From NCBI RefSeq assembly GCF_011386835.1, contig NC_088815.1:14074001-14138000 (forward strand): DNA of 64,000 bases. Reading direction: 5' to 3'. The notes under the pieces were generated by a model that was given only the letters and a program-made list of their open reading frames with translations, searched no databases and was not told the origin of the DNA. The DNA comes from Chrysemys picta bellii. Lineage: Eukaryota. How positions within the stretch are numbered: position 1 is the stretch's first letter; every line of letters starts with the position of its first letter. The translations under genes were made by a program, and so were the position numbers. This document shows, in pieces, positions 1,749-59,177 of the stretch.

Positions 1749-2129
1749 CAGGTCGGCGTTGCAGGTCCGCAGGGTGGCGTTGCATTTCTCCAACTCTTTC
1801 TGGGTTGCCGTCACCTGCTGGACGCAGCCGAGCTTCTCCTTGCTGGTGGCGTTGAGTTGCTGGGTGAGGTTTTTGTTCTTGGCGTTGAGCAGCGTCATCT
1901 TACTGTAGAGCTCCTGGACCTGCTCCTCCAGGTGCCGCAGGTGGGTGTCGGTGCCGGCGTGGGCGTTGCCGTAGAGCATGAAGAGAACCAGCCCCAAGAT
2001 GATGAGGAACTGGATGACCGAGGTGAATAGGAAGATGTATTTCATGTAGAAGCCACAGTCCCGCTTGGGGTTCAGGTTGTCCCTGGACTCCAGGCCGAAC
2101 TTGGCCATGGCGTAGGCGTTCTTGTCCAT
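1749..2129 (-). CDS. PLVAP: PLVAP (PV-1) coding exon 1, 127 aa: short cytoplasmic tail, type II TM, start of coiled coil; later exons lie outside the window
   Basis: MDKNAYAMAKFGLESRD...KRDCGFYMKYIFLFTSVIQFLIILGLVLFMLYGN matches the recognisable PLVAP N-terminus (human: ...RGCWYYLRYFFLFVSLIQFLIILGLVLFMVYGN). Good Kozak (gcaacATGG); phase-0 donor ctg|gtaggc at 1748. Confidence 0.93.
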
Positions 2130-41337: not shown

Positions 41338-43784
41338 TCAGACAAGCAGTGCAGCGAGGGGGGCTGCCAGCAGAGGCAGGAGGGGGGGGAGCCTGGCACT
41401 GCCCACACTGGAGCGAAGTTCCTGGTGTCTTTGGAGCTGCTGCTGTAGCCAGCTGACCTCCCTGTGGTACTGATCCCTGCGGGAGGAGGAGGGGAAATGC
41501 AGAAGAGTGTAAAATAGCCCTTCCATGGGCCTCGTACCCTGCCAGTGCATCTCCCCTGCCTTGGGGATTTGGGTCATGGGGGGCAATCACTCATCCACTC
41601 CAGGAGCCCCCAGGGAAGAGTGACTCACCCTGACCTTTTGCATCCGTTACACCATGTTTCCATGCTGGCCCCCTGGAAATGTTGGCTGGTTCATTCATTT
41701 CAAGACCCTCCCTCTCCACAGCGTGCTGCCCAGGGAAGGGCAATGGGGTGAGCACAACCCTGGGAGCCAGAGACTGCAGGCGTTTCACCCTGAGGCCTGG
41801 TCCCAGGGGAAGGGCCCCCGGGGGAGAACTGAAGTGCAGGGATTGCCCAAGGGGGCAGGTGGGCCTTACTTTTGCTCCTGGAGATGCTGGACCTTGTTTT
41901 TCCAGGTGCTAATTTCATCTGGAAAACAGGAGTGGGAGGGAAGCTGGGATCAGAACCGCCACAATGCTAGTCACCCCCTCCCCATGGTCAGGGCCAGAAT
42001 TAACCCTCTCCTCTCCCCACCCCTGCCAACGCAAACACCAGACGGTGCTGTGCAGGGCTGAGGGGCTGCTCTGACCCCTAGCGTGTGCCCATCGTGCCCA
42101 GTCCATTGGCCAGACTTCTGCACTGGGGACGCCTGGGCACCTTGAGCCGCTCCCCATGCTGTGCTGATGACCGCCCGCCGCCCACTTTGTTCTGTTGGAC
42201 AGACTGGCCGCCACTCGCTTACCCTTTACCTGAATCTGCAGCATCAGTCACCTGACCCTGCTGCCTGTATCACACCGCATCCTCCTCTCCCCTCCCATCA
42301 GCCGCCCACTCCCCCCTTTATCATTCCCTGTTCCCAGGAGCTCTCCCACTGCCTGTGAAGCCCATCCGGTCTCTAGAGCAGACCCCTGGCCCAAGCAGTT
42401 TACCCTGGATGAGTCCTCCCATGAGGTCACCGGGCAGGAGAGGGTTGCGGTGAGGGACAGAACCAGGGGACTGTTTTTGCAGGGCTGCCCTGGAGGTGCC
42501 GGAGCTCAGACCTGTCCGGGTCGTGACTGGCACACAGCAGTGGCAAGGGAACCAGTGTGCAATCCTTGGAGATGCTGGCACTGGGCGACATCCCAGGGAG
42601 GTCTCTGCCTGCCTTATCCCCCCAGTGAGGCACCCCCTCCCTCAGGAAGCACTTGCCATGACCTCCCAGGCACCTGCAGAACTAGGAGCAAGCAGCGGTC
42701 TCACCTTGTAACCTGCCTTTTTCCACCTCTTGCTGGGCAATGTCGCTATTTAACCGGGTGACCTCCTGGGTCAGGTTGATGACATTCTTCTGCAGGACAT
42801 GCTGAAGGAGGAGAGAGAGAAGAAACACCTTAGATTTTCAGAGAGCCCTGCATCCTCAAAGCACTTTCCAAACTGCCTGGGACTCACTCAGCCCATCACT
42901 GAGAGGCAGCCACCTCTGGGGTGGGGCATGACATCTGTTTATCAGCAGACACCAAACAATTTAGGACAGGAAGGGACGAAGGCACCTGTATCCAACTGGA
43001 ACAGCAGACAGGCAGGACGTAGTCACCCCGGATAGGTGTTGGTCAGGATCACGGAGCGAAGAGCAAGGCTCTTCTCCATTTGCTCAATAGATACCCAGGA
43101 TTGACACAGAGGTGGGGCTGCGGGCCAGGACTGAGGGTGTCAGGGAGCTGGTGTCAGGGAGCCTCAGGCTGGACTCGTAGGGGGCCGTGCACTGGGATGG
43201 GGCGTTGTCGGCAGAACTGTGTGGCTGGGCACTGCACTGCCAAACAATTCCACCTCCTGGCTGGATTCCAGCCTGGTCTCTCTCCTGGGAGCAGAAGAGC
43301 TGGGGGTGGGGAGGGAAGGCCGTGCTAACCTTAGCACAGCAGTATCCCATCCCATCTGCCGCCTGCTGCTGTTTGCCCCTGGCCTGGCCTTTGGCTAGAG
43401 CTGGCGTCCCCTGGCACCGGTTAGGAAGGGGAGGAGGGAATTCCAGCGGTGAGTACAAGGGCTGCCTGGGAAGCGGGGGGCTCAAATCCAGCTCCCAGGA
43501 GTGTGTGTTGGCAAGTGGGCGCCACGGTGCCATCGGCTGGAGGCAGCTGCCCCACGTACCGTGTGGTTCCTGCACACGTCAGAGCTCTCCTGCATCTCCT
43601 GCAGGGTCCAGTTGGCACGGGCCAGCTCCTCCCGCAGGCCCAGCACGTCGCTGTGCAGCCACTGCTCCGTGGCCACAAAGTGGCCCAGCCCGGCTGCCAG
43701 GATGAGGACGATGGCGAGTTCCACAATGGCCACGGCGAGCCAGACCTTCCTGCTGCCCCAGGCGAGACCCCCGGGGTCGCCCAT
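41338..43784 (-). CDS. BST2: Tetherin/BST2-like gene 1 (169 aa); exons 43560-43784, 42705-42801, 41870-41918, 41338-41476
   Basis: GT-AG junctions with phases 0,1,2. TM VWLAVAIVELAIVLILAAGLGHFV; exon 1 ends CRNHT (human CNHT, Cys91/Asn92); exon 3 DEISTWKNKVQ resembles human GEITTLNHKLQ; GPI-type tail SSVGSARLPPLLPLLAAPLAALLV*; AATAAA at 40209-40204. Confidence 0.88.
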
Positions 43785-44382
43785 CGGGGTCAGAGGGCCC
43801 AGCCGGAGCCAGGCGGGCGGCCACACGCTGCAAAGGAATGGGGCAGTTTGGCCCTGTTAGTGTTTCTAACACCCTCCTCATTAGCATACCCCTTGCCTTA
43901 ATAGCACGGCCCAGATGAGCAGATCACCCGCCAGCATAGTCCATAAATCTGCATGCAATTCATTACCACCAGTAATTAACATATTTAACACGGTGATTAG
44001 CAAACCCCTCATTAACATATTCATCGTTGTCTTGCTTGCTCGTCAGTGCATATCGTAGATTAGCATATCCATCGTTAATTAGCATATCGCACATTAGCAT
44101 ATCCCTCATTAACACCTCACGCCAGCTGTGCCCGAGCCCGCCCCGGGACGCGCGGGGCTGGGGGCGAACTGGGGCAGTGCCGGGGCCGCAGAGCCGCGGG
44201 GATAGAGGCCGGACGCTGCGTCCCGGTCCCGGGCAGCCCAGGCGGCCGCCTGCGCGGGGTCGGGGAGCGCCCCCCCGGGTGCAGCGGGGCTGCATTAACC
44301 CCTGCCGGTCCCGCAGCCCCGCTGGGCGCGGGGGTCCCAGCACCCGGGTCTCACCTCGGCCCGACGGGACGCGCCAGGCCCC

Positions 44383-44392
44383 GGGAAATCCC
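44383..44392 (-). promoter_or_regulatory. NF-kB site at the promoter/5' exon of BST2-like gene 1
   Basis: GGGATTTCCC, an exact GGGRNWYYCC match, 40 bp from the ISRE; a non-coding exon ends at a GTGAGA donor (44354) and can splice to the acceptor before 43827. Confidence 0.6.
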
Positions 44393-44428
44393 AGCTGGTC
44401 GCTTTCGGGTCCGCCCCGCCCGGGCTTT

Positions 44429-44441
44429 GGTTTCGTTTCTC
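44429..44441 (+). promoter_or_regulatory. ISRE upstream of BST2-like gene 1
   Basis: GGTTTCGTTTCTC (GAAACGAAACC on the gene strand) next to a GC box in CpG-rich DNA; conserved with flanking 'tgcagaagctgc' at 59164-59189. Confidence 0.72.
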
Positions 44442-46277
44442 TGCAGAAGCTGCCGCGGGGAGGGGAGGGAGGCGGGACTGGGCCGGTCCGGCGGCGAAGG
44501 GCAGGCGGCGAGGTGGGGCCAGAGGGGGCGCTGCGGAGTTCATGGGGACCCCAAAACCCTGGGGACAGGGGGCCGGGCAGCTGGCTTCGGGCTTAGCCCC
44601 CCCATTGCCACCCAGCGGGGCTGTGGCATGGGGCTCCCTGCTCCCAGGAGCAGCAGCAAAGCCCCATCCCCAGAGGAGCAGCTGGGGTCCCCTCTCTGCA
44701 GCGCTGGCAGTGGGTCCCCCCAGTATTCACCTTGGGGGCATCTGTGGGGGGCAGGGGGTCACTGCACATTTCTCCGGCTAGGCACGTAATCCAGTGCTGA
44801 ACAGTGCCGGATCCCTCTGTGGCTGGGGGTTAGCACCCCGTTGGCATACGAGAGGCCCTCTCAGAGCATTGGGCTCAGGCTGGCTGCAGACTCAGGCAGC
44901 AGCACTACAGGGGTTACACTCGGGTCACGTTTTTAAGGTTTTCTTGGCCAGCAGAAGGGCTCAAAACTGACCTTTTAAATTGATTGATTTTCAATGAAAG
45001 CCTCGGGTCTGATGCCATTACCTGGCTCCCGGAGCGGGGCCCTAGGCTTGGGCCTACAGCGCTTTCCCCTAAGAGCGCCCTGTGCAGAGCCCGTCACCCC
45101 AGCCCAGGAGCAGGGAGAGGGGCTTGCTGCCCCATGCTCCAAACTAGCAGCACAGTTAGGAGCTGCCTCTTCCCTGCTCTCAGGTCAGGCGTGCGACAGC
45201 CACGAATACGGCTCGGGGGTGCTCGCTCTGAGCCCCGGGTCTCTGATCGGGCAGGGCGTGGGAGGACAAATGACACCACAAACCTTTGGGGTTGGCAACA
45301 TTTTATTAGAAAAATAGAAACCCTCAAGGGAGCAGCAAATACCCCCACTGGGGCTTGACCCCGCTCAGGGCAGCCGTCGTCTGGGGCAATCTCCAGCCAA
45401 GAAACGCCAGGGGCGCTGGATGAATTGGCTCCATCCTCCCTGCCCTCTTCACCCGCTGGATCTTCTTCACCATTTCCCCATCGTCTTCCAGTGCCGGGCA
45501 GGAGCCAACGAGATCCTTCCGCCAGGGCTGGGCTGGGCAGGAACCCGCCCCCCTGCACGACCCGGGGGAAATGCCAAGCAAGCTAGTGGCTTAGAAGAGT
45601 TCTCGTGAGCATTCTGGGGATGGGGGCGAGCTGGCCGCGCTATGCAGTGTGACCTGGTCTCATGGGGATTCTCCACTCTCCCGCTGCCTGGTCAGCCCTG
45701 AAACACAAATCCCGAGGGACACAGAGAGAGTCCTGCGTCCCCCGCCACCGAACACTGCGCTGAGCTACCTAATAGCAGAGGGAGAGAGAAGGGGGGGATG
45801 GGGAGTGAGGGGCAGGGGACTGCAGAGAGAGGGTGGCTTTGTGTTTATAGCACGGGGCCGGTACTCTGCAGATCTAGGGTCAAGTCCGGGCTCTGCCCTG
45901 TGCTCCTGGGGTGACTCACTCATCTCCTTGGGCCTCAGCCCCCGCGTCTGTAAAAGCGGGGTAAGGATCCTGCCTTTGCCTGGCTTGGCTACTCACAGTG
46001 TGAGCCGGGCAGGGCTGGTACAGCTGGGCCCTGTAAGTGCTGCCGAGCTAGGGGAGGGGCTTGGCATGGGATGGAGAGGTACAGGGAGGCCGTGCTGCAG
46101 GGCAGGAGGACGCTCTCATGCCCGGGGAGGCAGTGGCTGAAGACAGGCGCTGTCTCGGGTGGAGGTGACAGAAAGGGGCCCTGCAGCCTAAGCGCATGGG
46201 GGTGAGAGAGCAGCAGGACCGGGAATTGAACCCAGTCCACCTCCAGGCTCCTCAGTACCTGTGCGAACCGGCTTCTC

Positions 46278-49200
46278 TCACAGGAGCAGGATCCCGGCGA
46301 GGGACAGAGCCAGCAGGTTCAGGTAGCCGGCCACGAGGGGGATCCGGAGGCTGCTCCCACCAGAGCTCTGGTTCTTCGGGCTATGGAGCTGCTGCTGTTC
46401 CAGCCGCCGGAGGTCAGCTTGGAGTTTATCACTGGGGGAACAAGTGAAAGGGAAGGAGATGGTAGCAGAGAGCTCTGGGGGAGGGGCCTCCCACAGCGCA
46501 GCCCAAAGGGGCAGGGACGGGCTGGTCTCACCTGTGCCGTTGAGCCTCCTGGAGCTGCTGTTTGAGCGTGTCTATTTCACCTGGACAACGACAGAGGGGA
46601 CACGGGGCAGTGCCAGTCAGATGAGGCAGCATGCGTCTCCCCCCTCCCTTCGAGCATGTCCCCCTCGACACCCCCACCCCTCCGTCTGGCACATCGGGGA
46701 CAGCTCCCTCACTGTACCTCCTGCCTCTATTTCCCCTGCGCCAGGCCTCTGTGTCAATGGGGCTGAGGGTCCGAGGAGAGGTTTGGGTGCTGAGATGAAC
46801 ACAGGATTGGGCCCTGCCTATTCACCTCCCCCATCCCTTTATCGGCCAAGAAGATTTTGGCCTTCTGCAGTTGATGAGGATTGTGGCAGCGCCTGGGACC
46901 CCCAGCCATGGGCGAGGGCCCCACGGTGCTAGGCGCTGTAAAAACCCACAACAAAAAGATGCTCCCTGCCCCATGGAGGTAACAATCTCAGCAGAAGACA
47001 AGAGAGAACAGGTGGATGTAGACACACTGGGAAGGACAGCTCAGCCTCTGTGCCCTGCCCAGTCCTTGGTCTCTCTGCTGGGGCTGCCACTGGCTGCTGG
47101 CTCTGGTGGGTGTTTCTGGCTTGGAGACCTTTGTCCCCTTTGAACCAGGCTGAGCTTATCGTAACAGTCAGTAAACAGCACCTAGGGCACCCAGCCCTCC
47201 ATAGCCAATTACCAACCTTACAAGCCAACCAGTCCCCTGTCCCCCCCAACGAGTGGGGAAGTAGGTCCCGGCTCAGGGCAGCAGAAAATCCCCCACCTGG
47301 AGTGACCTGGTCTCCTGGCTCTGAGCAGGAGGGTTTGTCCTGGTCCCGCCGCTCCTGTAATGTTACTTGGATCTGGCTGAGAGGACTGGGCCCAGCACAC
47401 GGGGCTTCACACTTCCATGACCCTGGCCCCGGAAGCTCCACGCATGCACCCCAGAAAGGCATCCCCTGTCTTAGAGAGGACCTCTCCTGGCCATTAGCCA
47501 GGAGCTGCTCAGAGCAGTCGTCTCACCTTGTCCCCGTCCTTGCTCGGTGCCTCGGCCTCCCAGCTGAGTGATTTCATCCTTCAGGGCAGTGATGTTGTTT
47601 TGCAGGACGTGCTGAGCGAGAAAACGAAAGAGAAAAATCAGCATCTCTGAGAGCGATGCCCACGGGAAAGCCTCTGCTCACTTGTGCTGTGCAGCCACCT
47701 CTGGGGCAGAAGGCGGCAGCTGTGCCACAGCTCAGAAAAACACCACACGGCAGCTTAATGACCATGGACACACTCATTGCCGTGCCACGGGGAGCAGAGT
47801 GGAGTTACTGGAGATGGATTCCTGTCCTCAGAACAGGCCAAGGGGTGCTTGCATCAGACCTGAAAGCTGGCACCCCCGGCAATAACCGTAGCCCGGCGCT
47901 GGGCACTGCTCTGTACGGAGTCACAGGGAATGGAGCCTCCTACTGCGGCACCAACCCCATGTCCTTCAGGCCTAGCTGAACAGACCTCTCAGCTATTATC
48001 TGATAGGTGCTTCTTATTTTTTCCTAGTTCAAGGTTCCCCTTTCCCCAGCTCTCTCCCAGGGTGCTGCTAACGCCCAAATCAGCCTTTTGTCCTCTCGTG
48101 GAGAACTGAATTCGACTCCAGTGGTGCTGGTGTGTGGGGGTGCACGTTAGACCAGACCCACTGGACCCTGCAGGACCTGTGGTTCTCCCATTCCAGATCT
48201 CTGGGACCGCCTGGATCAATGATAGGAGACAAACAGGGAACAGGCCATCAAACACAGACTGACTAGACCAGCCAGCTTTCCACTACTCAAAGGGACCAGG
48301 GCTGGCTCCAGGGTTTTTGCCACCCCAAGCGGCAGGGAAAAAAAAAAGCCGCGATCGTGATCGGCAGCAGTTTGGCGGTAGCTCTACCGCGCCGCTTTCT
48401 TCTTCGGCGGCACTTCAGCGGCAGGTCCTTCCCTTCAGGAGGGACCAAGGGACCCGCCACCGAATTGCCACCGAAGAGCTCAACGTGCCGCCCCTTCCCC
48501 TTGGCTGCCCCAAGCACCTGCTTGCTGAGCTGGTGCCCGGAGCCAGCCCTGAAAGGGACCCTCCTCTTCACGTCTGTCTGTCCCGCTCAATCCCATCTCT
48601 TCACTTACTCTTGGTTTCCCTCCTTCCCCCTACTTCTCCCATGGTCACAGACTCAGTTTCTCTCTGTCTCTCGCAGGCTCCACGCTGCCTGCCGCTGTCC
48701 CCCACCCCCACCCCTCCAGCTGTCACTTCCCCTCTCTCTGAGGGGAGAGACCACCTCCTCTCCACAGAACAAGACAGGCCATTCCCCAGGCCACCCTGCA
48801 AACCACAGCTCCCCAGCCAGGGTCGAGTCCCTGCACCATGTTTACACAGACATGTGCAGAGAAGAAAATTAATTTGATCGGTAACAAAAAGCCACCAGGG
48901 ACCCAGGTGACCCCCCCGGGCTAGTGCAGCCACCTCTCACCCCGGCAAATCCTGCATCGGGGAGCAAGTGAAATGAGCTGCCTGGGACCCGTCCCCAGCC
49001 CAGCCCACCCCACAGAGCAACGGGACAAATCCCTTGCTCAGGGAAGCTCCGGGGTGGACCAACAGGGGGCGCTGCATGTGACCGTGTGGGGAATAGCACT
49101 GGGGGCTGTGGGGAGGGACCCGGGAAAACGCTGCTTGTGCTGGGGGACGGGTATTGACAAGCACAGGCACGGCCCCACCAAGACAAATCATTGTAGCATT

Positions 49201-49682
49201 TTGCAGAGCAGCCTGGAATGGTCCCCTGGCTGTGAGCTGCCCGGGGCAGGGCCTGGTGCTGGCACCTTTTCGCAGCCCCCAGCCCTGCGCCACCCTGATC
49301 CTGGACAGGGCCTCCTGGGCGCTACCGTAGACTTATATTAAACAGCAACAACATCCAAAGCACGCACCGTCAGGCTCCTGCAGGACTCCCAGCGCCCGCG
49401 CGTCTCCCAGAGGGTCTGATTGGTGCCAGCCAGCTCCGACCGCAGCGCCGTGACCTCTGCCCTCGCCCCATCCCGCTGCTGTTCCAGGGCCCCCTTCTCC
49501 TCCTCCAGGTTGGCGAGTTTCCCCGTCAGAGCGGAGGTGTTTTTCTTCAGCTGCTCCTGGCACTGTCTCAGCTGGGTCGGGGCAAAGGAGATATAGACCA
49601 CGCAGGCAATCAGCCCGATTAACACTAAGATGAAGGCGACCGACAGGAAAACACAGCAGCGCGTCTTCCAGTTGTCCCCCAT
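46278..49682 (-). CDS. BST2: Tetherin/BST2-like gene 2 (200 aa); exons 49368-49682, 47527-47611, 46532-46580, 46278-46431
   Basis: GT-AG junctions with phases 0,1,2. TM CCVFLSVAFILVLIGLIACVVYISF; heptad-rich ectodomain with NTS, NQT, NIT sequons; exon 3 GEIDTLKQQLQEA; GPI-type tail SSGGSSLRIPLVAGYLNLLALSLAGILLL*; AATAAA at 45307-45302. Confidence 0.88.
48297..48551. mobile_element. hAT-type MITE in intron 1 of BST2-like gene 2
   Basis: TIRs cagggctggctcc / ggagccagccctg; perfect 8-bp TSD AAAGGGAC; same family as 14312-14536. Confidence 0.88.
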
Positions 49683-52600
49683 GCTTTTGTTCTCCAAAAA
49701 CGGGGGGCGGGGAGGGGAAGTTTAGCAGCCAGTGCTCATCCCAGTATGTGAACCTCGCTGAGCTGACAGCCCGGCAGCCTCACTCTGCAAAAAAGAAAGA
49801 GTTTCTTTTGCCCTCTAGTGTTTTCTAGTTGTGCTCCTCATTAGCATATGGGACGTGTTCCTGTTCTAGGGGGAGATGGATTTCCTCAGGAACGGCCCTG
49901 TCCAGGAGATCATGTGGTTCGAGGGAGTCAGGCAGTGCTGGGCTCGGACGGATTTGGGCTGTAGCCCCAGCGCTCTGCCCAGCTGCGATGTAACCGGGCT
50001 GGCAGGGAGAGGCGGCGAGCGCTGCAAAGGGCCCTTGTGGCTGGAGGTGCTCTGGGCTACTGTGCGGGAGACCTGGATTTGAGTCCCTGTCCCTCACCTT
50101 CACTCTGCCAGGCTCCGAGTCCATCCCCATCGCTCTGCTCTGCCGCTGCCGGAGGTCCTGCTGGGTAGTGCCCTGCCACGGGTCTGATCCCTGGACCCCC
50201 ACCACTGGCCGAGCTCGGGCGGGCTGGCTCCAGGCAGGGGTGTGCCTCCTGTGCAGGGCAAGGCCCCTGGGCTGCTCTAACCCTACAGAAGACCTGGTGG
50301 AGCCCTGCCCGGTGCTGGAGGCTGGAAGCCCTGCAGCCCAGACAGCCTGGGGAGCTCTGCTGGGCCTGGGACGGGCCATGTGGGCCAGACGCCCTGAGGT
50401 GCTGGTGGGGCTGTGTGCTGAGCTCCCCCTGGAGACAGGGGCTTTTACTTGGGCTGGAGGCAGAACAGAAGCAGCTGGGGCCTCTGGCACTGGGGGGGCT
50501 GGGGCAGCGCCATATCTTCCCCCGCTGGGAGCTGTGCCAGCCTGGGGGGGGGGTCTCTGGGTTATGGGGACCCCCCCCAGCTCTGGGGCTTCTGGAGGGT
50601 TATTTTGAGCCATGTTCCATTCTATTTCCACCTCCCTGCATGACGATAAAATAATAAAGGGCCATTGTCCATGGATAACACGCTGCCCCCTCCCACACCA
50701 GTCGCAACCTGAATTCACCACCCCACCCGCCCACCCAGGGCAGGGACAGGGGCAGGTGAGCTTTGTCCCCCTTTTCACATGGTGGGCCGGGTGGGGGATC
50801 TCGGGCACAGAGAGGCCATGGCTGCCAGTCAGTGCCATCTCCTGACCCTGGCGGGGGCAGCTCAACAGGGCAGGGGGGAGCTGGGGGAGGGGAGTGGTCC
50901 CCACTAACCCAAGCACCCCAAACCCTCCCGAGTGGCTGCAGGGACGTCGCTGCTTCCCTTCCACCAGCACCAACACACACACACACAAGTACACAAGGTG
51001 CCACAAGTACTCCTGTTCTTTTTACACACACACAGCTCATCAGTTGGGAAGGGGCTAATTTACCTGCAGCTCACAACTTTGGGGCTTTTTCTTTTTTAGT
51101 TCAGAGAACAATTTCTTTCTTTTTGTCTTTTTATACGTTATACCCCTCCTCCCCAACACAACCAATAACCCAGGACATTCCTCTTTCCCTGCTGAGGCAG
51201 CGGCCAGCCCACTCCTTGGGCCCTTCCTCCTCCAAAACCAGCCAGGCCCCTGCTGCAGCCTGTGGGCGGTGGGGGAGGGGAGGGGTTGCTCAGATCCACA
51301 GGCAGGGGCTGGGCTCCACCTCAGGGGAACGGGTGAGGAAGAAACTCTGGGTCCAGACCCGCTAGAACTGCCCCCGGTTCTGGAGCGCCCGGCCTGTGGC
51401 TGCTGCATGGCAGAGAACCGCATAGGCCAACCCGCCTGTTGGCCTGGCAGGAGCTGGGGGTGTCCGGGGGTGTTTGCTAGACAATGGACTTTGCATTGAT
51501 GATGATTATCATGTACAGCCCCTAGCGCAGCGGGGTCCTGGCCCATTGCTGGAGCTCTTTCGATAGGTACTGCCATGGGGTGGCTCGTGGCTGCCCTTTT
51601 AAGGGGAGGGGGCTGATCCAGCCTCCTGTGACTGATTGTTCACCCCTCCCCTCACGGAGGGCAGGCATGGGAGCTGGACCTAAGAAGGGGTGAATGGGAG
51701 CATCTGGGCCCTATCAGACCCACTCTGCTGCACTTGGGAGAGGGTGTGTGTCAGGCAGCGTGGAGATAGGAGGAGGAAGCTATGGGGTGCTGGGGCAGAC
51801 AATACACTCGGGCTTGTCTCTTGCTTAGGGGGCTGGGGGAAGTGAGACAGTCCCCGTAGCAGGCCCTGGGGAGAGAGAGAGGGCTGGCACTGGCTGCAGG
51901 AGAGGGGTTCTGTCGTGGGTCTCAGAGAGGAGCAGAGGATGACAGTATAAACTGGAACAGGCTCTGTCTTTAAACACGCTAGGGCAGCGCTACATCAGTG
52001 GCTCTCCTGTCGCTCTATGCAGCACACGATCTTAAATCACCGGGTGATTTAATTCTTAACCAATCTACGTTATTAACCAATCAGGTGGCTCTGACCATGT
52101 TATTCACCAGTCTCCAGCACACGAAGGAGTGCCGTCAAGGTAAGGCTCATCACCTGAAGTTTGATAACACATAGGTCGGAAGACGCGTGGCTCATTGTCG
52201 TTGATAAAATCATAATAGCTGGTCCGTCATTTTGCTGAGGGAGAATCACATACATGAACTATTCGCACTGTTTAACTAGGAATAGCGAGCACTATAGTAA
52301 ATGAAACAATACATTCCCGCCACGGTGGCTCTTTAGGGTAACGGCGTAGGCCACAAGCCGAAGGGGAAGCAATTGTCTCAAGTCCGATTGTACTCCATTT
52401 TGCTGATTTTGCCTTATACTCCATTTTGCTCATGAATTAGTAAGAAGAAATTGTTCGGAGTTTATTCTTTGCTGATTGTGTTAACATTTGCTCTTTGAAG
52501 GAGAGCAGTTTTAGGGCTGTAATTGCCTTATTTGCTGTTTGGCGTGAGTGAAGCATGTCCGGTGATTAGCTGAGACAGGACAACTGGGCCGGATGGTCAA

Positions 52601-53609
52601 GAAGGGAGTGGAGGAGTCAAGAAGCGCCAGCTTTATTATCAATCACCCGGAGGGCAGATTGACGACCCTAAAGCGAATGCATCCAGTCCCAAGGCCGAGA
52701 TAAGGAGTTGAGCCAGAGGGACAGATAAGAAACAGCTGCGAATCCTCCTAGTAACAACTCAAAATAATGCTAAACAGAGCAACCTTGAATACCTCGTGAC
52801 TGACAGCTCCGCGGTGACGCAGCAAGCTCCAGAGAGTTGTACGATAAAAGACGGGTGTATCGCCACGGGACTTTGCGTTCGTTCTGCATCAACCTCGGCG
52901 CTTCGAACGCCTTCAACAGAGCCCAGCTTCCCCTCCCTTGTGTGCTGAGCAGTACTAAGGACTGGTATGAGATCCAGCTGCAGAACCGGGGGTGGGGGGG
53001 GGCGTATTGCCTTATCCCCTTTAAAAAGATTCCCTTTGCTTCTTATAAGATAACAATGGCTCCTGAAGGGCTGAGTAGAACCGCACGACCGGACACCCTT
53101 CCCCTCGGTGTCTTTCCTTTAGTTATGTTTTGAGGGAGCGCTGGGGAAGGCACTGGGGGGGGGTTCCCAGCCCTGGGAAATAGGGACAGAAGACCCAGCT
53201 GTGGTATGTTTTGTGTTCAAACCCTGACGTTGGATCTCTGGTATCCCGACGGGAGGAGACTCTGGCCAGCACAGAGCCGGGGGCTGAGTCACCAGAAGAA
53301 CCAGACCACCACAGGGCTTGAATGGCCCTCAAAGGCCGTCCCTGCAGTGCTAGCCAGTGAGATGCTCGTCTGCCTAGAAGTCTATTAGCTACAGTAAGCT
53401 GTACATTCTTAACAGTGAGGATAATTAACCACTGGAGCCATTTACCAGGGGTCGGGGGGGCTGATTGGGGGCAGTTCTCTTCCTTTTCCTCCCACAGCCC
53501 CGCTTAGCCCTCCCATCTCTTCCCCTTCTGGACAAAGGGACGGTAGCGGGGCTGTGGTTGTTAAGGAGACCGGATGGTACTGGGGGCTCTCGACGTCGTC
53601 CAATCCAGA

Positions 53610-53960
53610 CTGGCTGCCTTCTGGGAAGCTGCGTTAGTCAGATACGTTATTGGGCTCCATTCAGGGGAAGAGGGCAACATTTAATGTCGGGGCTATGCCA
53701 GGGATCCGACTACATGACCTAATGGTCCCTTCTGGCCTGAGACGCTATGAAACTGGTCTGTGCATTAAAGCACCAGGAGCTGGGAGCCAGGACTCCTGGG
53801 TTCCATTCCCAGCTTTGCCACTGCGTGCCTGGGGGCACGTCCCTTTCCCTCGGTCTGCTGCGGTTTCCCCATCTGTAGAATGGGTCTAATGGTTCTGATT
53901 ACCCAGGGTGTGCTGCGAGGTTCGGTTCGGTTCACCCATGTTGGACAGGTGCTTTGAGAT
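53610..53960 (+). mobile_element. Degraded CR1 3' end followed by a MIR/CORE-like SINE remnant (paralog at ~61980-62340)
   Basis: 'gactacatgacctaatggtcccttctggcct...ctatga' then 'ccaggactcctgggttcc...tttccccatctgtagaatggg'. Confidence 0.5.
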
Positions 53961-55566
53961 CATCAGTGGAAGGTGCTGGAGAAGGGCAATAAGTGTTCTG
54001 CTGATCCCCCAGTTGCAGGGGCAGCTCACCCCCTCAAAGTAATTACTTCAGGCTCTCAGTAAATGCAGGCAGGGGTTGCTGCATAGATCACTATCTCGTT
54101 AGCGCCTGCCCATTCAGACCAATTGACTCAGGCTCTCTGCAGACTCAGGCAGTGTCACTGCATTGGTTACACTCGGGTCACCATGCGAGCTGTCCTTGGC
54201 ATCCCTGAGGATTAGAAACTGACCTATACATGAAAGTCCCAGGTCTGATGCGGGGCCCTAGGCATGGGCCTACAGTGCTTTCCCCTAAGAGCGCCCTGTG
54301 CAGAGCCCGTCACCCCAGCCCAGGAGCAGGGAGAGGGGTTTGCCCCGTGCTCCAAACTAGCAGCAGAGTTACGAGCTGCCTCTTCCCTGCTCTCTGAAGG
54401 CAGGTCAGGCGTGCGACGGCCACGAATACGGCTCCGGGGCTGCTCGCGCTGAGCCCCGGGTCTCTGATCGGGCAGGGCGTGGGAGGACAAATGACACCAC
54501 AAACCTTTGGGGTTGGCAACATTTTATTAGAAAAATAGAAACCCTCACGGGAGCAGCAAATACCTCCGCTGGGGCTTGACCTCGCTCAGGGCAACCGTCG
54601 TCTGGGATAATCTGAGTCTGAGAAACCCCAGGGGCTCTGGCTCTGGGTGAAGCGGCTCCATCCTCCCTGCGCCCTTCACCGGCGGGATCTTCTTCACTGT
54701 TTTCCATCATCCTCCAGTGCTGGGCAGGAGCCAACGAGATCCTTCCGCCAGGGACCGGCTGGGCAGGAACCCGCCCCCCTGCACGACCTGGGGAAGGGCC
54801 GAGGTCATAGCAAGCTAGTGGTTTAGACCAGTTCTCCTGAGGGCGACTTGGAGGGGAGCGAGCCGGCTGCGCTGTGCACCGTGTTCCCGTGGGGATTCTC
54901 CACTTTCCACTGCCTGCTCAGCCCTGAAACACAAATCCCGCGGGATCGAAAGGGCATTGGGGACGGATGATGGAAATAAACGGAGAGAGAGAGAGACACA
55001 GTCCTGTGTCCCCAACCCCTGACCCACTGCGCTGAGCTAAAGAACAGCAGCGGGAGAGAGAAAGGAGATGTAGGCGAGGGAGGACTGGAGAGGAAGCATG
55101 GCCTTAGGGTTACATGCTGGTGCTCAGGAGAGCTGAGTTCAAGGCTTGACTCTGCCATGTGCTCCTGGGGCGACTCACTAATCGCCTTGTGCCTCAGTTT
55201 CCCATCAATAATGATCTTTCTTTTTTTCCTGTGCTGCTCTTTGGTCTGCGAGCTGTGTCTCTGGCCTGGCACAGGTGCTGCCATGCGCTGGGAGGAGACT
55301 TGGAATGAGATGGGCGGTTCAGTGAAGCCAGGCTAGGCAGCAGGACCTGCACAGGAGATGGCTCTCTCGCCTGCGGGGGGGAGAGCATGTGGCGTGGTCA
55401 GAGATGAGCAGGCACAGAGCGGTGGCTGGGTGAAGGCTGGAGCTGTCTTTGGTGGCGGTGACAGGACGAGACCCCTCTGCCCAAGAGCCTGGGGGTCAGA
55501 CAGCAGAAGGGGTCTCTGGACAAGTCTGTATCCAGGCTCCTCGATACCTGAACAAAGCGGCTCCTC

Positions 55567-57745
55567 TTAAAGGAGAAGGGTGCCAAGGAGGGACAGTGCC
55601 AGCGGAGCCAGGCAGAGAGACACACGGTGACCCCCGAGGCTGTCCCCGCTGGAGCGCTGATTCCTCTGGCTTTGGAGCTCCATGTTCAGCCAATGGATGT
55701 TCGCTTTGAGCTGATCTCTGGGGGAACAAGCGAAAGGGAAATGCACATTAACTCCGAGCTCTGGGGGGAGGGCCCACCCCTCCGAGCTCTGGGGGGAGGG
55801 CCCACCCCAGCCCCATGGGGTCGGGACTGGTGGGTCTACCTTTGCTTCTGGAATTCTTCCTGGGAATCCTGCAGTTGCTGGGACTGGCTGGAGAGCTGGT
55901 CTCTGAGCCTGCCATTTTCATCTGGAAAAAGAGAGGAAGGGAAAGCCACCAGGTGTCAGTGTGTTACCCAGCCTGCCTTTCACCTCCATTCCCTAGCACC
56001 ACACACGCCTTTCCTTCTGGCTCCACCCCGAGACCCCACCCAGTCTGTCTCCATCCCCCTCTACACAAGGGATCTCTGCCAAGCCATCCGGCCCCCCTGG
56101 AATTCGCAGCATCTCACCTTGTAACCCTCGTTCCTTGGCCTCCCACTCAGAGTCTCTGGCCTCCAGCTGTGTGATTGTGTTGCTCAGGGCAGTGATGTTG
56201 TTCTGCAGGTTATGCTGAGCCGGAAGAGGAGGGAGAGAGAGGAAAAGGAATCATTATCGCTGACTGTGCAAGCCACACAGAAAGCCCTTACCCAGGTGTG
56301 AAACTGATCGGTTCTGGCCACTGTGTCCTTTAAGATGTAAGAACTCATCCCCTCACGTGGCGTTTTCCTGCTTTTTCAACTCCCAACTGTTTTCTCAACT
56401 TCGAACGAACTAGTCATTGAACTGAACTAGGGGCATAAACTGAACAGAAGAAAATATTTTCTCTGCACGTCCAGAAATGACTCCTAATGTCAATAGCTGG
56501 TTCAGCATTTCAACCATCTCTGGCTTCAGGTGCTTAGCCAGCGACTTCCACCAGGTCAGTGGGCGGCTTTCTTTAAAACCTGGCAGAAAACATACCCGGT
56601 TTGACTCTGTTTTATTTAATGTCAAGGAATGTAACAGAGTATAGTACGTTTAGGTCTCAAAACAGGATTTTAAATAGAATTATTTTTAAAAAGAAAACAG
56701 TGTTCAATTTACAGTCTAAAAAGATTGGATTTTTTAAATATATATTTTCAAATCACCCATTTTTAGCCCCCGGCAGCTCATTGAAAGTGCCCGGGGTGGC
56801 AGAGCGGAGTCAATGGAGATGTATTCCTGGCCCAGAGATGGGGTGTCACAGCACCTGCAGTCGCACAACACCCACCGGGGCACTGGCTCCATCTGTATTC
56901 CAAGGGACTGGAGCCGCCTGCGGAGTCCCCAACCCCACGGCCACACAGATACGGAGAATTCAATGAACTGATATTGGTCTCAAAAGGCCACACAGGCCGC
57001 TGGATGCCCCCAGGGTCCATGCAAGGCAGGGTTAAAATTTCCCAGCGGGGAGCAAGTGACGTGAGCTGCTAGACTGGAGCCCCTGGCCCCAGCCCACCCC
57101 ACAGAGCAACAGGACAAATTCCTTGATTAGGAAACAGTCATGAATGCACCAATGGGGGGTGATGCATGCCACTGTGTGGGGAGCCCAGGGCCGGATCGGC
57201 TGTCAGGGGGGCAGAGCACTGGTGTCAGAGCCTGTGAAAGAAACTTCGTGTACTACGCCCGGGGGGAGGCGGGGGTATGGATTACACAAGCACATTTACT
57301 CCCCCAACAGCAGCCTGGAAAGGTCCCTAGGCTGTGAACTTCCCAGGGCAGCGCCTGGCACCTTTGTACAGCACCCAGCACTGCGCCACCCTGATCCTCG
57401 ACTGGGGCTCCTGGGGGCTACCATATACCAATATTAAACAGCAACAACAGCACCCACCGTCAGGCTCCTGCAGGAGTCCCAGCGCCCGCGCGTCTCCCAG
57501 AGGGTCTGATTGGTGCCAGCCAGCTCCGACCGCAGCGCCGTGACCTCTGCCCTCGCCCTGTCCCGCTGCTTTTCCAGGGCCCTCTTCTCCTCCTCCAGGT
57601 TGGCGAGTTTCTCATCCAGATCTGAGGTCTTCAGCTGCCCCTGACACTCGACCACACAGCAGGTGAGAGCGATTAATATGGCAGCTAATATGAAGATGGA
57701 GGCACCTACCAGGCAGACGCAAAGTTTCTTCCGCTTGTTGCCCAT
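55567..57745 (-). CDS. BST2: Tetherin/BST2-like gene 3 (205 aa; 216 aa from the upstream in-frame ATG at 57778); exons 57458-57745, 56118-56214, 55840-55921, 55567-55717
   Basis: GT-AG junctions with phases 0,1,2. TM LCVCLVGASIFILAAILIALTCCVV; coiled coil nearly identical to gene 2 in exon 1; GPI-type tail SSGDSLGGHRVSLCLAPLALSLLGTLLL*; AATAAA at 54528-54523. Confidence 0.88.
56340..56625 (-). mobile_element. hAT transposase C-terminal (dimerisation domain) remnant in intron 1 of BST2-like gene 3
   Basis: PLTWWKSLAKHL...LLTLGVISGRAEKIFSS resembles the hAT WW...S(S)A..ER.FS motif; absent at the matching position of gene 2. Confidence 0.65.
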
Positions 57746-59123
57746 GCATTCGCTCCCTAGACAGACGGCCTTGGGCATGACCCCCACCAGCTCTCTCTCC
57801 AGAGACTCAGATGGGAGGAGGTTGAGCGACAAATGTTTCCCGCAGTTTGTTCCTCTCCTGCCGCAGTGTCTCTGGATGCAGCTGCTGCCCAAGTGCCAAC
57901 CCCATCGAGTTGCTCCCTGCAAAAGAGTTTCTCTGGCCCCCTAGTGTTCAGCGCTGTGCTCCTTCTCAGCCGGGAGGTACAGCTCCAGATTTCCCGTGCT
58001 AGGGAGGATAGACTCCCCCTGGAAGGGGCTTTCCAGAAAATCACATGGTTTCCCGTTAAAGGAAGCTAGGGAGCGCTGAGGTCAGCGTTGTTTGGCTGAA
58101 GACCCAGTTCCCCGTCCGTTGTTCTGATGGCCTTGTAGCCGGGTGCTGCAGAAGCCGGTCAGGGCAGTTGGCTAGCGCTGTGATTAGCCCTGGGGGAGAC
58201 CTGGGTTTGATTCCTGGTCCCACTTCTTCCCCCAGCTGCCAGCAGATGGGCATGGTGGCTAGCGCTCTGGGCTACCACACAGGGCAGCTGGCTCCGATGC
58301 CATCCCCAGACTCTGGGGCTGGGCTTTGTGCCCCCTGCACACGGTGAGGCCCCTGGGCTGCTCTATGACCTGGCTGGATCCTTCCCCTGTGTTGGCAGAG
58401 GCTGGGAGCCCTGCAGCCCACACAGCCTTGGGGCTTGGCAGCGGGTTCCAGGCCCACTGTGCCATCCCCCTAGGCTGGTGGCGGAGTGGATACCCTTTGC
58501 CCTGCTGTGGTCTGTGCCCCATTCTGTTAGGGGCGGGCAGCGGGGACAGAGAGAGGAGCTGTGTGGGTGAGATGCCCTGGGGTCCTGGGGGGCGGGGGTC
58601 TGGGTGCTGAGCTCCCCTGGAGACAGGAGATGCAGCCAGACCAGGAGCTGCATCTCCTGGGGTAGGTGGTGCAGCGCCCTGCTGGGAGCCGTGCCAGGCC
58701 AAGGTGGCGCCGCATAGGCCCCTGGAACCAGTCCCCTGGGGTCTCTGGGTCTTGGACTCCCAGGGCTGCTGGGGTGTCTTTTGAGCCACGTTTTATTCTA
58801 TGCCCACCCCCTGCGTGATGATGACAATAATGGGGCATTATCAATTAATAACCCGCTGCCCCCTCAAGCTGGTCACCAGCTGGGATAAATTCAACCCCCA
58901 CCCAGGGAGGGGGCAGGTGAGGATCATCCCTGCTTCACTTGGTGGGGAGAAACTGAGGCACAGAGAGGCTGTGACTAGCAGCCAGAGCCCACTGCAAACA
59001 TGTTTCTTGCCCCAGGATGGGGCCGTGGTTCCCCTCCCCATCAGCCCCCAAACCCCCAATCCACCCTCCCACCCAGTGGCCCCCCCCTCAGCTTCCATCC
59101 GCTGGGGGTGGCCAGGGCTCATC

Positions 59124-59177
59124 GGTTTCGGTTTCCGCCCTGCTCACCCCCCTCCCCCACATTAGGTTTCGTTTCTC
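59124..59177 (+). promoter_or_regulatory. Two ISREs upstream of BST2-like gene 3
   Basis: GGTTTCGGTTTCC (59124-59136) and AGGTTTCGTTTCTC (59164-59177); the second is paralogous to the gene 1 ISRE. Confidence 0.72.

What the first reader, a model, noticed from the sequence alone, without database searches (positions are those of the whole stretch)
41338..57778. Expanded array of three intact, divergent tetherin (BST2)-like genes in a reptile
Downstream of PLVAP and CCDC194, at the position of the single human BST2, three genes each splice by GT-AG rules into TM-coiled coil-GPI proteins (169, 200, 205 aa) with ectodomain Cys and N-glycosylation sequons, a poly(A) signal ~1 kb after the stop, and ISREs for two of them. 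The ORF track shows only fragments of these genes. The paralogs differ strongly in tail, TM and ectodomain length, as expected for a restriction-factor repertoire diversified against different viral antagonists or virion types. Whether this expansion is already described for this species could not be checked.
Basis: partly seen in the sequence, partly recalled or inferred. Interest (0 to 1): 0.88.

Follow-up and report, generated by a model that had tools for sequence, protein, structure and literature searches.

The report
Three tetherin-like genes in painted turtle
The painted turtle carries three intact, transcribed genes in a row that encode tetherin-like membrane proteins (the kind that chain budding viruses to the cell surface); all turtles examined share the trio, and two of the copies keep overwriting each other's central part.

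Summary
Observation confirmed. On the minus strand of 41338-57778 lie three genes, each with four coding exons, GT-AG introns and the same intron phases (0, 1, 2). They encode 169 aa (g1), 200 aa (g2) and 216 aa (g3; 205 aa from Met12). Spliced RNA contigs from four studies reproduce all three g1 introns and two g2 introns exactly. RNA-type runs hold all of g3 exon 1. The g1 model equals a Chrysemys picta bellii RefSeq protein misnamed 'nucleoprotein TPR-like'.

Each protein has a short tail, an N-terminal membrane helix, a long helical ectodomain with Cys and N-glycosylation sites, and a GPI-signal-like C-terminus. The genes sit upstream of CCDC194/TMCC(aT) and PLVAP, where tetherin lies in other vertebrates.

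A turtle profile finds the published alligator tetherin (XP_006017475, E 5.7e-12), a bird 'BST2-like' protein and squamate relatives. Pfam's mammalian BST2 model does not match.

The trio is old. Pelodiscus has all three genes, Mauremys has them in the same order, and g1 groups with alligator tetherin. New here: g2 and g3 show gene conversion in the central ectodomain (dS 0 against about 1 elsewhere).

Antiviral activity, GPI anchoring and interferon induction are inferred, not shown. Verdict: new member of a known kind. Two key papers on turtle tetherin could not be read.

The parts
41338..43784 (-). g1 coding region: four exons (43784-43560, 42801-42705, 41918-41870, 41476-41338) giving 169 aa, the shortest ectodomain of the three
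   Evidence: Model. All three introns are reproduced by spliced RNA contigs. The protein is identical to RefSeq P0013 of Chrysemys picta bellii.
43827..44355 (-). g1 5'-UTR intron (43828-44354) between a non-coding first exon that ends at 44355 and the coding exon that starts at 43827. Other contigs run through it unspliced to about 44170.
   Evidence: Joint 43827/44355 with CT..AC ends in run X13; contigs of X2 and X9 cover 43560-44170.
44415..44445 (-). g1 promoter module GCAGCTTCTGCAGAGAAACGAAACC with an ISRE-like core at 44430-44439. A GGGATTTCCC (NF-kB-like) motif lies downstream of it in the first exon.
   Evidence: The same module lies upstream of g1 in Mauremys (L006:9428).
40204..40261 (-). 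g1 poly(A) signals: ATTAAA at 40256 and AATAAA at 40209, 1082 and 1129 nt after the stop
   Evidence: The 3' end itself was not covered by reads.
46278..49682 (-). g2 coding region: four exons (49682-49368, 47611-47527, 46580-46532, 46431-46278) giving 200 aa
   Evidence: Model. Intron 3 is reproduced by a joint, and the exon 2/3 junction by a loose end. 200-aa RefSeq orthologs exist in Malaclemys and sea turtles; the Chelydra ortholog is 199 aa.
45286..46258 (-). g2 3' UTR: an intron at 46258-45698 whose donor lies 20 nt after the stop, then a terminal exon 45697 to about 45286 with AATAAA at 45307. Alternative acceptors near 45731 and 45765.
   Evidence: Joints 45696/46258, 45731/46258 and 45765/46256, and a poly(T) loose end before 45285. 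Signal found.
55567..57778 (-). g3 coding region: four exons (57778-57458, 56214-56118, 55921-55840, 55717-55567) giving 216 aa, with a second in-frame ATG at codon 12
   Evidence: Model. Exon 1 is held at share 0.80-1.00 in RNA-type runs. Orthologous RefSeq models: P0016, P0012, P0011, P0017.
59125..59190 (-). Two ISRE-like elements about 1.4 kb upstream of the g3 ATG: GAAACCGAAAC at 59125-59135, and the g1-type module with GAAACGAAAC at 59166-59175. Probable g3 promoter.
   Evidence: The link to g3 transcription is inferred from the g1 layout, not shown.
54523..54528 (-). g3 poly(A) signal AATAAA, 1039 nt after the stop. A CAG|GTATCG donor homologous to the g2 3'-UTR donor lies just after the stop.
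49368..49546 (-). Gene-conversion tract of g2, the 3' half of exon 1 (codons 46-105). Its partner in g3 is about 57458-57636.
   Evidence: Codons 73-105: 99% nucleotide identity and dS 0. Codons 46-72: dS 0.16. Rest of the gene: dS 0.86-1.13. Lineage-specific residues are shared by both paralogs in Mauremys, Pelodiscus and Emydura.
34038..38711 (-). Neighbouring CCDC194/TMCC(aT)-like sister gene. It has transmembrane and coiled-coil parts and ends in a hydrophobic segment followed by about 22 more residues, so it carries no GPI-type end.
   Evidence: ORFs. g2 exon 1 matches its exon 1 at 38% over 39 aa. Named CCDC194 orthologs P0037 and P0045 are found by the profile.
1467..2129 (-). PLVAP exon 1, the flank that anchors the synteny
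   Evidence: PF06637, E 2.8e-33, 115.8 bits, above the cut-off.

Best explanation
These are three tandem paralogs of the sauropsid tetherin (BST2-like) family in Chrysemys picta bellii. They lie head-to-tail just upstream of their sister genes CCDC194/TMCC(aT) and PLVAP.

Each gene encodes a type II membrane protein. It has a short cytoplasmic tail, one N-terminal membrane helix and an ectodomain helix of about 110-145 residues. The ectodomain is predicted to pair in parallel and in register, with cysteines facing each other and two to four N-glycosylation sites. A Ser/Gly-rich site follows, then a hydrophobic C-terminal tail typical of a GPI-attachment signal.

The most likely mode of action is that of tetherin. 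A disulfide-linked dimer is anchored at both ends, so one pair of anchors ends up in a budding enveloped virion and the other stays in the plasma membrane, which holds the virion on the cell.

Shown here: gene structure, transcription and splicing, intactness, conservation under net purifying selection, position in the genome, and homology to alligator and bird tetherins.

Inferred: GPI anchoring, dimerisation (prediction only), interferon control of g1 and g3 through the ISRE-like elements, and virus tethering.

The array is ancient. The g1 lineage probably split from the g2/g3 lineage before turtles and crocodilians diverged, and g2 and g3 split before living turtles diverged. g2 and g3 keep exchanging the 3' half of exon 1 by gene conversion, while tails, membrane helices, distal coil and C-termini diverge.
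For: Gene structure and expression:
- Gene models with GT-AG introns and identical phases.
- Spliced RNA contigs from four studies match g1 introns 1-3 and g2 introns 2-3 exactly.
- g3 exon 1 is fully held by RNA-type runs.
- g1 is identical to RefSeq P0013; g2 is 98-99% identical to the 200-aa P0001.

Protein layout:
- Hydropathy, Cys and N-glycosylation sites, and C-terminal SSG-type site plus hydrophobic tail.
- AlphaFold2 model of g1: one helix 5-147, a loop, then helix 161-168; mean pLDDT 84.5.
- Homodimer prediction for the g2-ortholog ectodomain: score 0.63 against best control 0.00, the three runs agree in at least 64% of contacts, and partner pLDDT is at least 72. In the tool's calibration the mark was reached by 21 of 30 proteins solved as pairs and 0 of 23 solved as single chains; on eukaryotes by 17 of 29 and 0 of 30. 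Contacts are in register (80-80, 91-91), and C41-C41 and C101-C101 touch.

Position:
- PLVAP and the CCDC194-like gene lie on the same strand downstream.
- The only WxxW (CILP2-type) domain on this contig lies about 50 kb upstream. PMC10617486 gives 'between CILP2 and PLVAP' as the criterion used for non-mammalian tetherins.

Homology:
- The profile search returned 40 hits among 1.84 billion representatives. They include alligator XP_006017475 and XP_006017476, named as alligator tetherin in PMC3989765, bird 'bone marrow stromal antigen 2-like', Rhea, emu and squamates.
- The family shares a near-invariant W..C motif, N-glycosylation sites and a Ser at the predicted attachment site.

Age and constraint:
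- In the tree each paralog is a starred clade, g1 joins alligator tetherin (94/86), and CCDC194 is separate (100/99).
- Same gene order in Mauremys.
- dN/dS 0.35 (g1) and 0.62 (g2).
- Gene conversion between g2 and g3.
- ISRE-like elements.
Against: - Pfam BST2 (PF16716) gives only sub-threshold hits on orthologs (E 0.045 and 0.0074 against a 27-bit cut-off) and none on the window's own exons.
- The sauropsid profile does hit mammalian BST2 crystal chains (E 8.5e-4 to 5e-3), but Smc, tropomyosin and other coiled coils score better, so this is not discriminating.
- Foldseek on the g1 model found nothing.
- No GPI predictor was available, and a second membrane helix is not excluded.
- g2 has no ISRE-like element at the position homologous to that of g3.
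- The ISRE count in the window (3 against 0.75 expected; 5 of 100 shuffles reach it) is only marginal by number.
- The tails are very short and lack the tyrosine motif recalled for human tetherin.
- No functional data exist for any turtle copy in the papers I could read.
- The g1 plus alligator grouping is not starred, and the backbone of the tree is unresolved.
Confidence: 0.75

Rival explanations
1. The three genes are turtle-retained offshoots of CCDC194/TMCC(aT) or PLVAP-type membrane-organising proteins. Their main role would be cellular, for example in membrane microdomains, diaphragms or adhesion. The tetherin-like layout would then be a family trait rather than a sign of antiviral function.
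For: - g2 exon 1 aligns with the neighbouring CCDC194-like exon 1 (38% over 39 aa).
- The turtle profile also finds named CCDC194 proteins (E 8.5e-7 and 3.9e-5).
- Pfam BST2 is not met.
- g2 lacks an ISRE-like element yet is well represented in RNA contigs.
- dN/dS is below 1.
Against: - CCDC194 forms a separate clade (100/99), and the turtle genes sit with alligator and bird tetherins.
- All three end in a GPI-type signal, which CCDC194 lacks.
- g1 and g3 carry ISRE-like promoter elements, and the g1 element is conserved in Mauremys.
- Per PMC10617486, turtle TMCC(aT) itself restricted HIV-1 release, so even this origin would not argue against tethering.
Confidence: 0.13
2. Only one copie is the working tetherin (most likely g1, the partner of alligator tetherin). 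The others would be redundant, decaying, or acting as modulators or decoys without tethering activity of their own, like the anchor-less sheep tetherin B.
For: - Paralogs with altered function are known: sheep oBST2B and bat isoforms (PMC10617486, PMC9599465).
- g2 evolves faster (dN/dS 0.62, and 1.13 in the last 25 codons).
- RefSeq also predicts isoforms of g2 and g3 orthologs that lack the C-terminal signal (P0004, P0009, P0011).
Against: - All three keep open frames, both hydrophobic ends and the same exon structure in Chrysemys, Mauremys and Pelodiscus, which represent deeply diverged turtle lineages.
- Each paralog clade is well supported.
- All three are transcribed.
Confidence: 0.1
3. 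The array is an assembly artefact, for example collapsed or duplicated haplotypes.
For: None found. The g2 and g3 units are a tandem duplication of about 8-9 kb.
Against: - The units are only 70-85% identical.
- Independent DNA runs hold 0.91-0.99 of the sampled words.
- The same three genes stand in the same order in the Mauremys mutica assembly.
- Pelodiscus has three separate loci.
Confidence: 0.01

Closest known systems
Alligator tetherin (Alligator sinensis LOC102372123; XP_006017475 and XP_006017476)
   Same: - Transmembrane helix, coiled coil and GPI-signal layout, with similar size (163 aa against 169 aa for g1).
- Significant sequence similarity to all three turtle genes (profile E 5.7e-12; BLASTP).
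- Groups with the g1 clade (94/86).
- Named as the non-mammalian tetherin in PMC3989765. From my memory of Heusinger et al. 2015, which I could not read, it blocks retroviral particle release.
   Different: - Turtles have three genes. Alligator sinensis shows two family members on one contig (P0028 and P0018).
- g1 is only about 25-30% identical to it.
- No turtle copy has been tested in any paper I could read.
Mammalian tetherin / BST2 (Pfam PF16716; structures 3MQ7, 3MQB, 2XG7, 3NWH)
   Same: - Position next to PLVAP, type II topology and a C-terminal hydrophobic signal.
- Predicted parallel dimeric coiled coil, ectodomain Cys and N-glycosylation sites, and ISRE-like promoter elements for g1 and g3.
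- A second in-frame start codon 11 codons downstream in g3 recalls the long and short human isoforms (PMC9599465).
   Different: - No significant sequence match.
- Tails are shorter and lack tyrosines.
- MVB12A is not the upstream neighbour here.
- The turtle genes carry a 3'-UTR intron: shown for g2, with the donor conserved in g1 and g3.
Tetherin gene duplications in sheep, cattle, marsupials and vesper bats
   Same: Tandem extra copies at the same locus, with copies that differ in tail, membrane helix and C-terminus (PMC9599465; PMC10617486).
   Different: - Those duplications are reported for single mammalian lineages. The turtle trio is shared by deeply diverged turtle lineages.
- All three turtle copies keep the C-terminal signal.
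- g2 and g3 show a gene-conversion tract limited to the core.
CCDC194 / TMCC(aT), the sister gene next door
   Same: Same strand and cluster, the same first-exon design (tail, membrane helix, start of the coil), and weak but detectable sequence similarity.
   Different: - Ends in an internal hydrophobic segment followed by more residues, not in a GPI-type signal.
- Forms a separate clade.

Membership tests
Tetherin (BST2) as defined for non-mammals by position and architecture | Located in the PLVAP - TMCC(aT)/CCDC194 cluster, on the same strand and upstream of them (between CILP2 and PLVAP in sauropsids) | tested here: met
   PLVAP exon 1 at 1467-2129 (PF06637). CCDC194-like gene at 38711-34038. 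The only WxxW-domain hit on the contig lies about 50 kb upstream; its identity as CILP2 was not verified. The criterion is quoted from PMC10617486.
Tetherin (BST2) | Short N-terminal cytoplasmic tail followed by a single membrane helix (type II) | tested here: met
   Hydropathy maxima of 2.6-3.2 in residues about 10-45 of all three proteins. The g1 model is helical from residue 5.
Tetherin (BST2) | Extracellular parallel dimeric coiled coil with interchain disulfides | tested here: met
   Prediction only. Homodimer score 0.63 against best control 0.00, runs agree in at least 64% of contacts, partner pLDDT at least 72. The mark was reached by 21 of 30 proteins solved as pairs and 0 of 23 solved as single chains. 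Contacts are in register, including C41-C41 and C101-C101. No experiment.
Tetherin (BST2) | N-glycosylation sites in the ectodomain | tested here: met
   g1 has 3 sequons, g2 has 4 and g3 has 2. Two positions are conserved across the sauropsid family.
Tetherin (BST2) | C-terminal GPI-attachment signal | tested here: inconclusive
   Small-residue site (SSGGSS, SSGDS, SSVGSA), a short spacer and a hydrophobic tail of 17-19 residues that runs to the last residue. A near-invariant Ser sits at this site across the family. No GPI predictor and no biochemistry were available, so a second membrane helix is not excluded.
Tetherin (BST2) | Sequence match to Pfam BST2 (PF16716) | tested here: not met
   No hit for the window's exons. 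Orthologs score 14.9-17.4 bits against a cut-off of 27. Per PMC10617486 and PMC9599465, non-mammalian tetherins lack sequence similarity to mammalian ones. This failure therefore argues against membership of the Pfam family, not against the tetherin kind.
Sauropsid tetherin family (alligator and bird tetherins) | Significant sequence homology to a published non-mammalian tetherin | tested here: met
   XP_006017475 at E 5.7e-12 and XP_006017476 at E 3.5e-7 by the turtle profile. Cited as alligator tetherin in PMC3989765. Bird 'BST2-like' at E 1.1e-6. Tree.
Tetherin (BST2) | Interferon-inducible expression | tested here: inconclusive
   ISRE-like elements upstream of g1 (conserved in Mauremys) and g3, none found for g2. 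Induction itself could not be tested.
Tetherin (BST2) | Restricts release of enveloped virions | not testable with these tools
   No functional data for turtle copies in the papers I could read.
CCDC194 / TMCC(aT) | Orthology to named CCDC194, with no GPI-type C-terminus | tested here: not met
   CCDC194 proteins form a separate clade (100/99). g1, g2 and g3 end in a terminal hydrophobic signal, unlike the neighbouring CCDC194-like gene.

The most novel reading that the evidence does not exclude
Turtles run a combinatorial tetherin system. Gene conversion keeps the dimerisation core of g2 and g3 identical, including Cys101 and the W..C/N-glycosylation block. The two could therefore form disulfide-linked heterodimers as well as homodimers. 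That would pair different tails, membrane helices and ectodomain lengths in one tether. g1, the old alligator-type lineage, would act separately. Such mixed dimers would be harder for a viral antagonist that targets one tail or membrane helix to remove.
Probability: 0.12. Interest if true: 0.75.

Novelty: new member of a known kind. Interest (0 to 1): 0.5.

Why it matters
Tetherin is a textbook restriction factor, but outside mammals only a few orthologs (alligator, some birds) have been studied. Public annotation calls these turtle genes 'uncharacterized', 'nucleoprotein TPR-like' or 'golgin-like'.

This work gives exact, RNA-supported gene models for three paralogs in a slowly evolving lineage. 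In that lineage, sequence similarity between tetherins of different reptile and bird groups, and with the sister gene CCDC194, is still detectable. The turtle locus is therefore a useful bridge for reconstructing how the PLVAP/CCDC194/tetherin cluster arose.

It also offers a natural experiment: three tethers with different lengths and anchors, two of which have a core kept identical by gene conversion. This bears on reptile virology too, since turtles host herpesviruses, ranaviruses and many endogenous retroviruses, two of which sit in this window.

Tried and rejected
- Pfam on single exons and on orthologs gave only generic coiled-coil hits. The precomputed 'PF27935' turned out to be a weak CCDC61_coil hit and is uninformative.
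- The first g1 protein search failed because a 75-aa query excludes 169-aa targets. It was repeated with a longer reference and a region.
- phmmer of P0001 against PDB gave only noise.
- The sauropsid profile against PDB finds BST2 chains, but below unrelated coiled coils, so it does not count as evidence.
- Foldseek of the g1 model against PDB found no match.
- The look-up of encoding contigs for P0013 found nothing on record, because the window's own genome is withheld.
- I looked for further copies. The whole-genome search finds only g2 and g3 with the g2 query, and only g1 with the g1 query. No tetherin-like exon lies in the 20 kb upstream or elsewhere in the window.
- MVB12A, the human upstream neighbour, is not on this contig.
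- Blanco-Melo 2016 (PMC4989275) and Heusinger 2015 (PMC4645306) are not held. I therefore could not check whether the turtle paralogs are already described. Full-text searches found no open paper that describes them.
- A g2-g3 heterodimer could not be tested, because complex prediction allows one job.

Full report
**What is in the sequence.** All features lie on the minus strand. Stop-to-stop reading frames and splice-site inspection give three genes with the same design. Each has four coding exons, GT-AG introns and intron phases 0, 1 and 2.
- g1: 43784-43560, 42801-42705, 41918-41870, 41476-41338; 169 aa.
- g2: 49682-49368, 47611-47527, 46580-46532, 46431-46278; 200 aa.
- g3: 57778-57458, 56214-56118, 55921-55840, 55717-55567; 216 aa.

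There are no N runs in the window.

**Are the genes real and expressed?** Fourteen small runs hold 21-40% of the sampled words of 41338-47338. They are labelled only as 'RNA?', which is a guess by the tool. I laid four of them, from four studies. They cover exons and leave introns at zero depth. Their contigs carry joints with CT..AC ends, which is GT..AG on the gene strand. The joints fall at exactly the predicted places:
- g1 intron 1: 43560/42801, in all four runs.
- g1 intron 2: 42705/41918, in two runs.
- g1 intron 3: 41870/41476, in all four runs.
- g2 intron 3: 46532/46431, in all four runs.
- A loose end at 46582 whose letters are the end of g2 exon 2.

- a 5'-UTR intron in g1 (44355/43827);
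- a 3'-UTR intron in g2 that starts 20 nt after the stop (46258-45698, with alternative acceptors);
- a poly(A) tail about 21 nt after the AATAAA at 45307.

Even so, RNA-type runs of five studies hold its exon 1 at share 0.80-1.00, among them two runs that showed exon-only coverage.

Protein databases agree. g1 equals a 169-aa RefSeq protein of Chrysemys picta bellii called 'nucleoprotein TPR-like', and its contig has the length of the window's contig. g2 is 98-99% identical to a 200-aa 'uncharacterized protein' of Malaclemys. g3 has RefSeq orthologs in Mauremys reevesii ('golgin subfamily A member 1-like'), Emydura, Gopherus and Pelodiscus.

AATAAA signals lie 1129, 971 and 1039 nt after the three stops. 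All three genes have a CAG|GTA donor just after the stop.

**What the proteins look like.**
- Each has a tail of 8-18 residues and then a strongly hydrophobic helix.
- The ectodomain is rich in charged residues and Gln. It carries Cys at 71 (g1), 41 and 101 (g2), and 45 and 103 (g3), with two to four N-X-S/T sites.
- The C-terminus has a run of small residues (SSVGSA, SSGGSS, SSGDS), a short spacer and a hydrophobic tail of 17-19 residues that runs to the last residue. This is the usual form of a GPI signal, but no predictor was available.
- AlphaFold2 models g1 as one helix from residue 5 to 147, a loop, and a short terminal helix. Mean pLDDT is 84.5.
- I folded the ectodomain of the g2 ortholog (residues 36-176 of P0001) as two copies. 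The score was 0.63 against 0.00 for the best of three controls. The runs agree in at least 64% of contacts, and partner pLDDT is at least 72.
- In the tool's calibration that mark was reached by 21 of 30 proteins solved as pairs and by 0 of 23 solved as single chains. On eukaryotes the counts were 17 of 29 and 0 of 30.
- The contacts are in register with 3-4 spacing (80-80, 91-91, and so on), so the coil is parallel. Cys41 faces Cys41 and Cys101 faces Cys101.
- This supports a disulfide-linked parallel coiled coil but does not prove it. Coiled coils can also score high from memory of solved structures.

**Where the genes sit.**
- PLVAP exon 1 is at 1467-2129 (PF06637, E 2.8e-33).
- A CCDC194/TMCC(aT)-like gene runs from 38711 to about 34038.
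- g1, g2 and g3 follow on the same strand.
- In the direction of transcription the order is g3, g2, g1, CCDC194, PLVAP. This is the arrangement described for tetherin (PMC9599465; PMC10617486).
- The MVB12 family has no match on this contig.
- The only WxxW-domain (CILP2-type) match on the contig lies about 50 kb upstream. This fits the 'between CILP2 and PLVAP' criterion quoted for reptiles and birds.
- There are no further copies in the next 20 kb, in the rest of the window or elsewhere in the genome.

**Is it tetherin?** Pfam's BST2 model, built on mammals, is not met. A profile of sauropsid members finds mammalian BST2 crystal chains only among unrelated coiled coils. That matches the literature, which says non-mammalian tetherins share topology and position but not sequence with mammalian ones.

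Within sauropsids, however, homology is clear. A profile of turtle g2 and g3 proteins searched against 1.84 billion representatives returned 40 hits. Most are 160-240 aa long and aligned over most of their length. By name look-up they include:
- three Pelodiscus loci;
- two Alligator sinensis genes;
- Rhea, emu, a merganser and a passerine protein called 'bone marrow stromal antigen 2-like';
- nine squamates;
- at weaker scores, named CCDC194 proteins.

One alligator hit is XP_006017475 (E 5.7e-12) and another is XP_006017476. A review names these two accessions as the alligator tetherin (PMC3989765). From memory of Heusinger et al. 2015, that protein blocks retroviral particle release. I could not read that paper.

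The family alignment shows a near-invariant W..C motif, two conserved N-glycosylation positions, and a Ser at the predicted attachment site.

**History.**
- In a maximum-likelihood tree, g1, g2 and g3 each form a well-supported clade that includes Pelodiscus. The g3 clade also includes the side-necked turtle Emydura.
- The g1 clade joins alligator tetherin (94/86). CCDC194 is separate (100/99). The deeper backbone is unresolved.
- Mauremys mutica has the same order: g3, g2, g1, then a 237-aa CCDC194-like gene.
- The trio therefore predates the radiation of living turtles, and the g1 lineage is probably older than the turtle-crocodilian split. It is a stable old array rather than a recent expansion.
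- The g2 and g3 units are a tandem duplication of about 8-9 kb, 70-85% identical at the DNA level.
- Against Mauremys, dN/dS is 0.35 for g1 and 0.62 for g2. For g2 it is 0.72 in tail plus membrane helix and 1.13 in the last 25 codons.
- That is fast evolution under net purifying selection, which speaks for function. It does not demonstrate positive selection.

**An unexpected feature.** Within Chrysemys, g2 and g3 differ at synonymous sites by 0.86-1.13 over most of the gene. Codons 73-105, at the end of exon 1, are 99% identical with dS 0, and codons 46-72 have dS 0.16.

Across species the two paralogs share lineage-specific residues in this block:
- WEMRGRW and KLAH in Mauremys;
- AGAN, CGSLT and LQSN in Pelodiscus;
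- CRSWT and TELRS in Emydura.

This is the signature of repeated gene conversion confined to the central ectodomain. That stretch holds the conserved glycosylation site, the W..C motif and Cys101. One possible consequence is g2-g3 heterodimers, which I could not test.

**Regulation.** The pattern GAAAN(1-2)GAAAC occurs three times in the window against 0.75 expected, and 5 of 100 shuffles reach three. The count is therefore marginal. The placement is more telling:
- All three matches are on the gene strand.
- One lies about 75 nt upstream of the donor of g1's non-coding first exon.
- Two lie about 1.4 kb upstream of the g3 ATG.
- g1 and g3 share a 25-nt module around the element.
- The g1 element is conserved in Mauremys.
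- g2 has nothing comparable at the homologous place.

Interferon control of g1 and g3 is a reasonable inference, not a result.

**Verdict.** The reading 'tetherin-like paralogs' is well supported by position, architecture and homology to alligator and bird tetherins. Antiviral tethering, GPI anchoring and antagonist-driven diversification remain untested.

Tetherin in reptiles and tetherin duplications in mammals are already known. The painted-turtle locus was studied by Blanco-Melo et al. 2016, whose paper I could not read. I therefore rate this a new member of a known kind. As far as I could check, three details are new: the age of the trio, the link between g1 and alligator tetherin, and the g2/g3 conversion tract.

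Noticed in passing
window 25740-31587 (+): An endogenous-retrovirus-like element between PLVAP and CCDC194 with long open frames: gag-like 258 aa, protease/RT-like 810 aa, integrase-like 384 aa and env-like 416 aa. Observed only and not analysed further.
   Followed up: no
window 8172-13587 (-): A second retrovirus-like element on the other strand, split into several shorter frames: an env transmembrane-subunit-like 153 aa, pol-like 415 and 359 aa, and gag-like 181 aa. It looks more broken than the first.
   Followed up: no
window 34038-38711 (-): The CCDC194/TMCC(aT)-like gene ends in a hydrophobic segment (FWYFVWVLASTSCFIFSLV) followed by about 22 more residues. Named CCDC194 of a lizard (P0045) and a newt (P0037) also end in a hydrophobic stretch, so this looks like a conserved non-mammalian feature. 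It may bear on the reported antiviral activity of turtle TMCC(aT) (PMC10617486).
   Followed up: partly
window 17400-18900, both strands: A GC-rich stretch with long Pro/Arg/Gly-rich open frames in several frames on both strands (repeats of the type PGPAARRTPPP). It is probably a minisatellite or low-complexity repeat rather than a gene.
   Followed up: no
window 57745-57778 (-): g3 has two in-frame ATGs 11 codons apart (Met1 and Met12). Both are conserved in Gopherus and Mauremys, but Met12 is absent in Pelodiscus. This resembles the long and short isoforms of human tetherin, which are made by alternative initiation.
   Followed up: partly
window 44380-44400 (-): A GGGATTTCCC (NF-kB-like) motif inside the non-coding first exon of g1, downstream of the ISRE-like element.
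   Followed up: no
public annotation (P0013, P0016, P0021, P0032, P0055): RefSeq names for members of this family are misleading coiled-coil look-alikes: 'nucleoprotein TPR-like', 'golgin subfamily A member 1-like', 'MAD1-like', 'fibrinogen- and Ig-binding protein-like' and 'MRCK gamma-like'. Only one bird entry is called BST2-like.
   Followed up: yes
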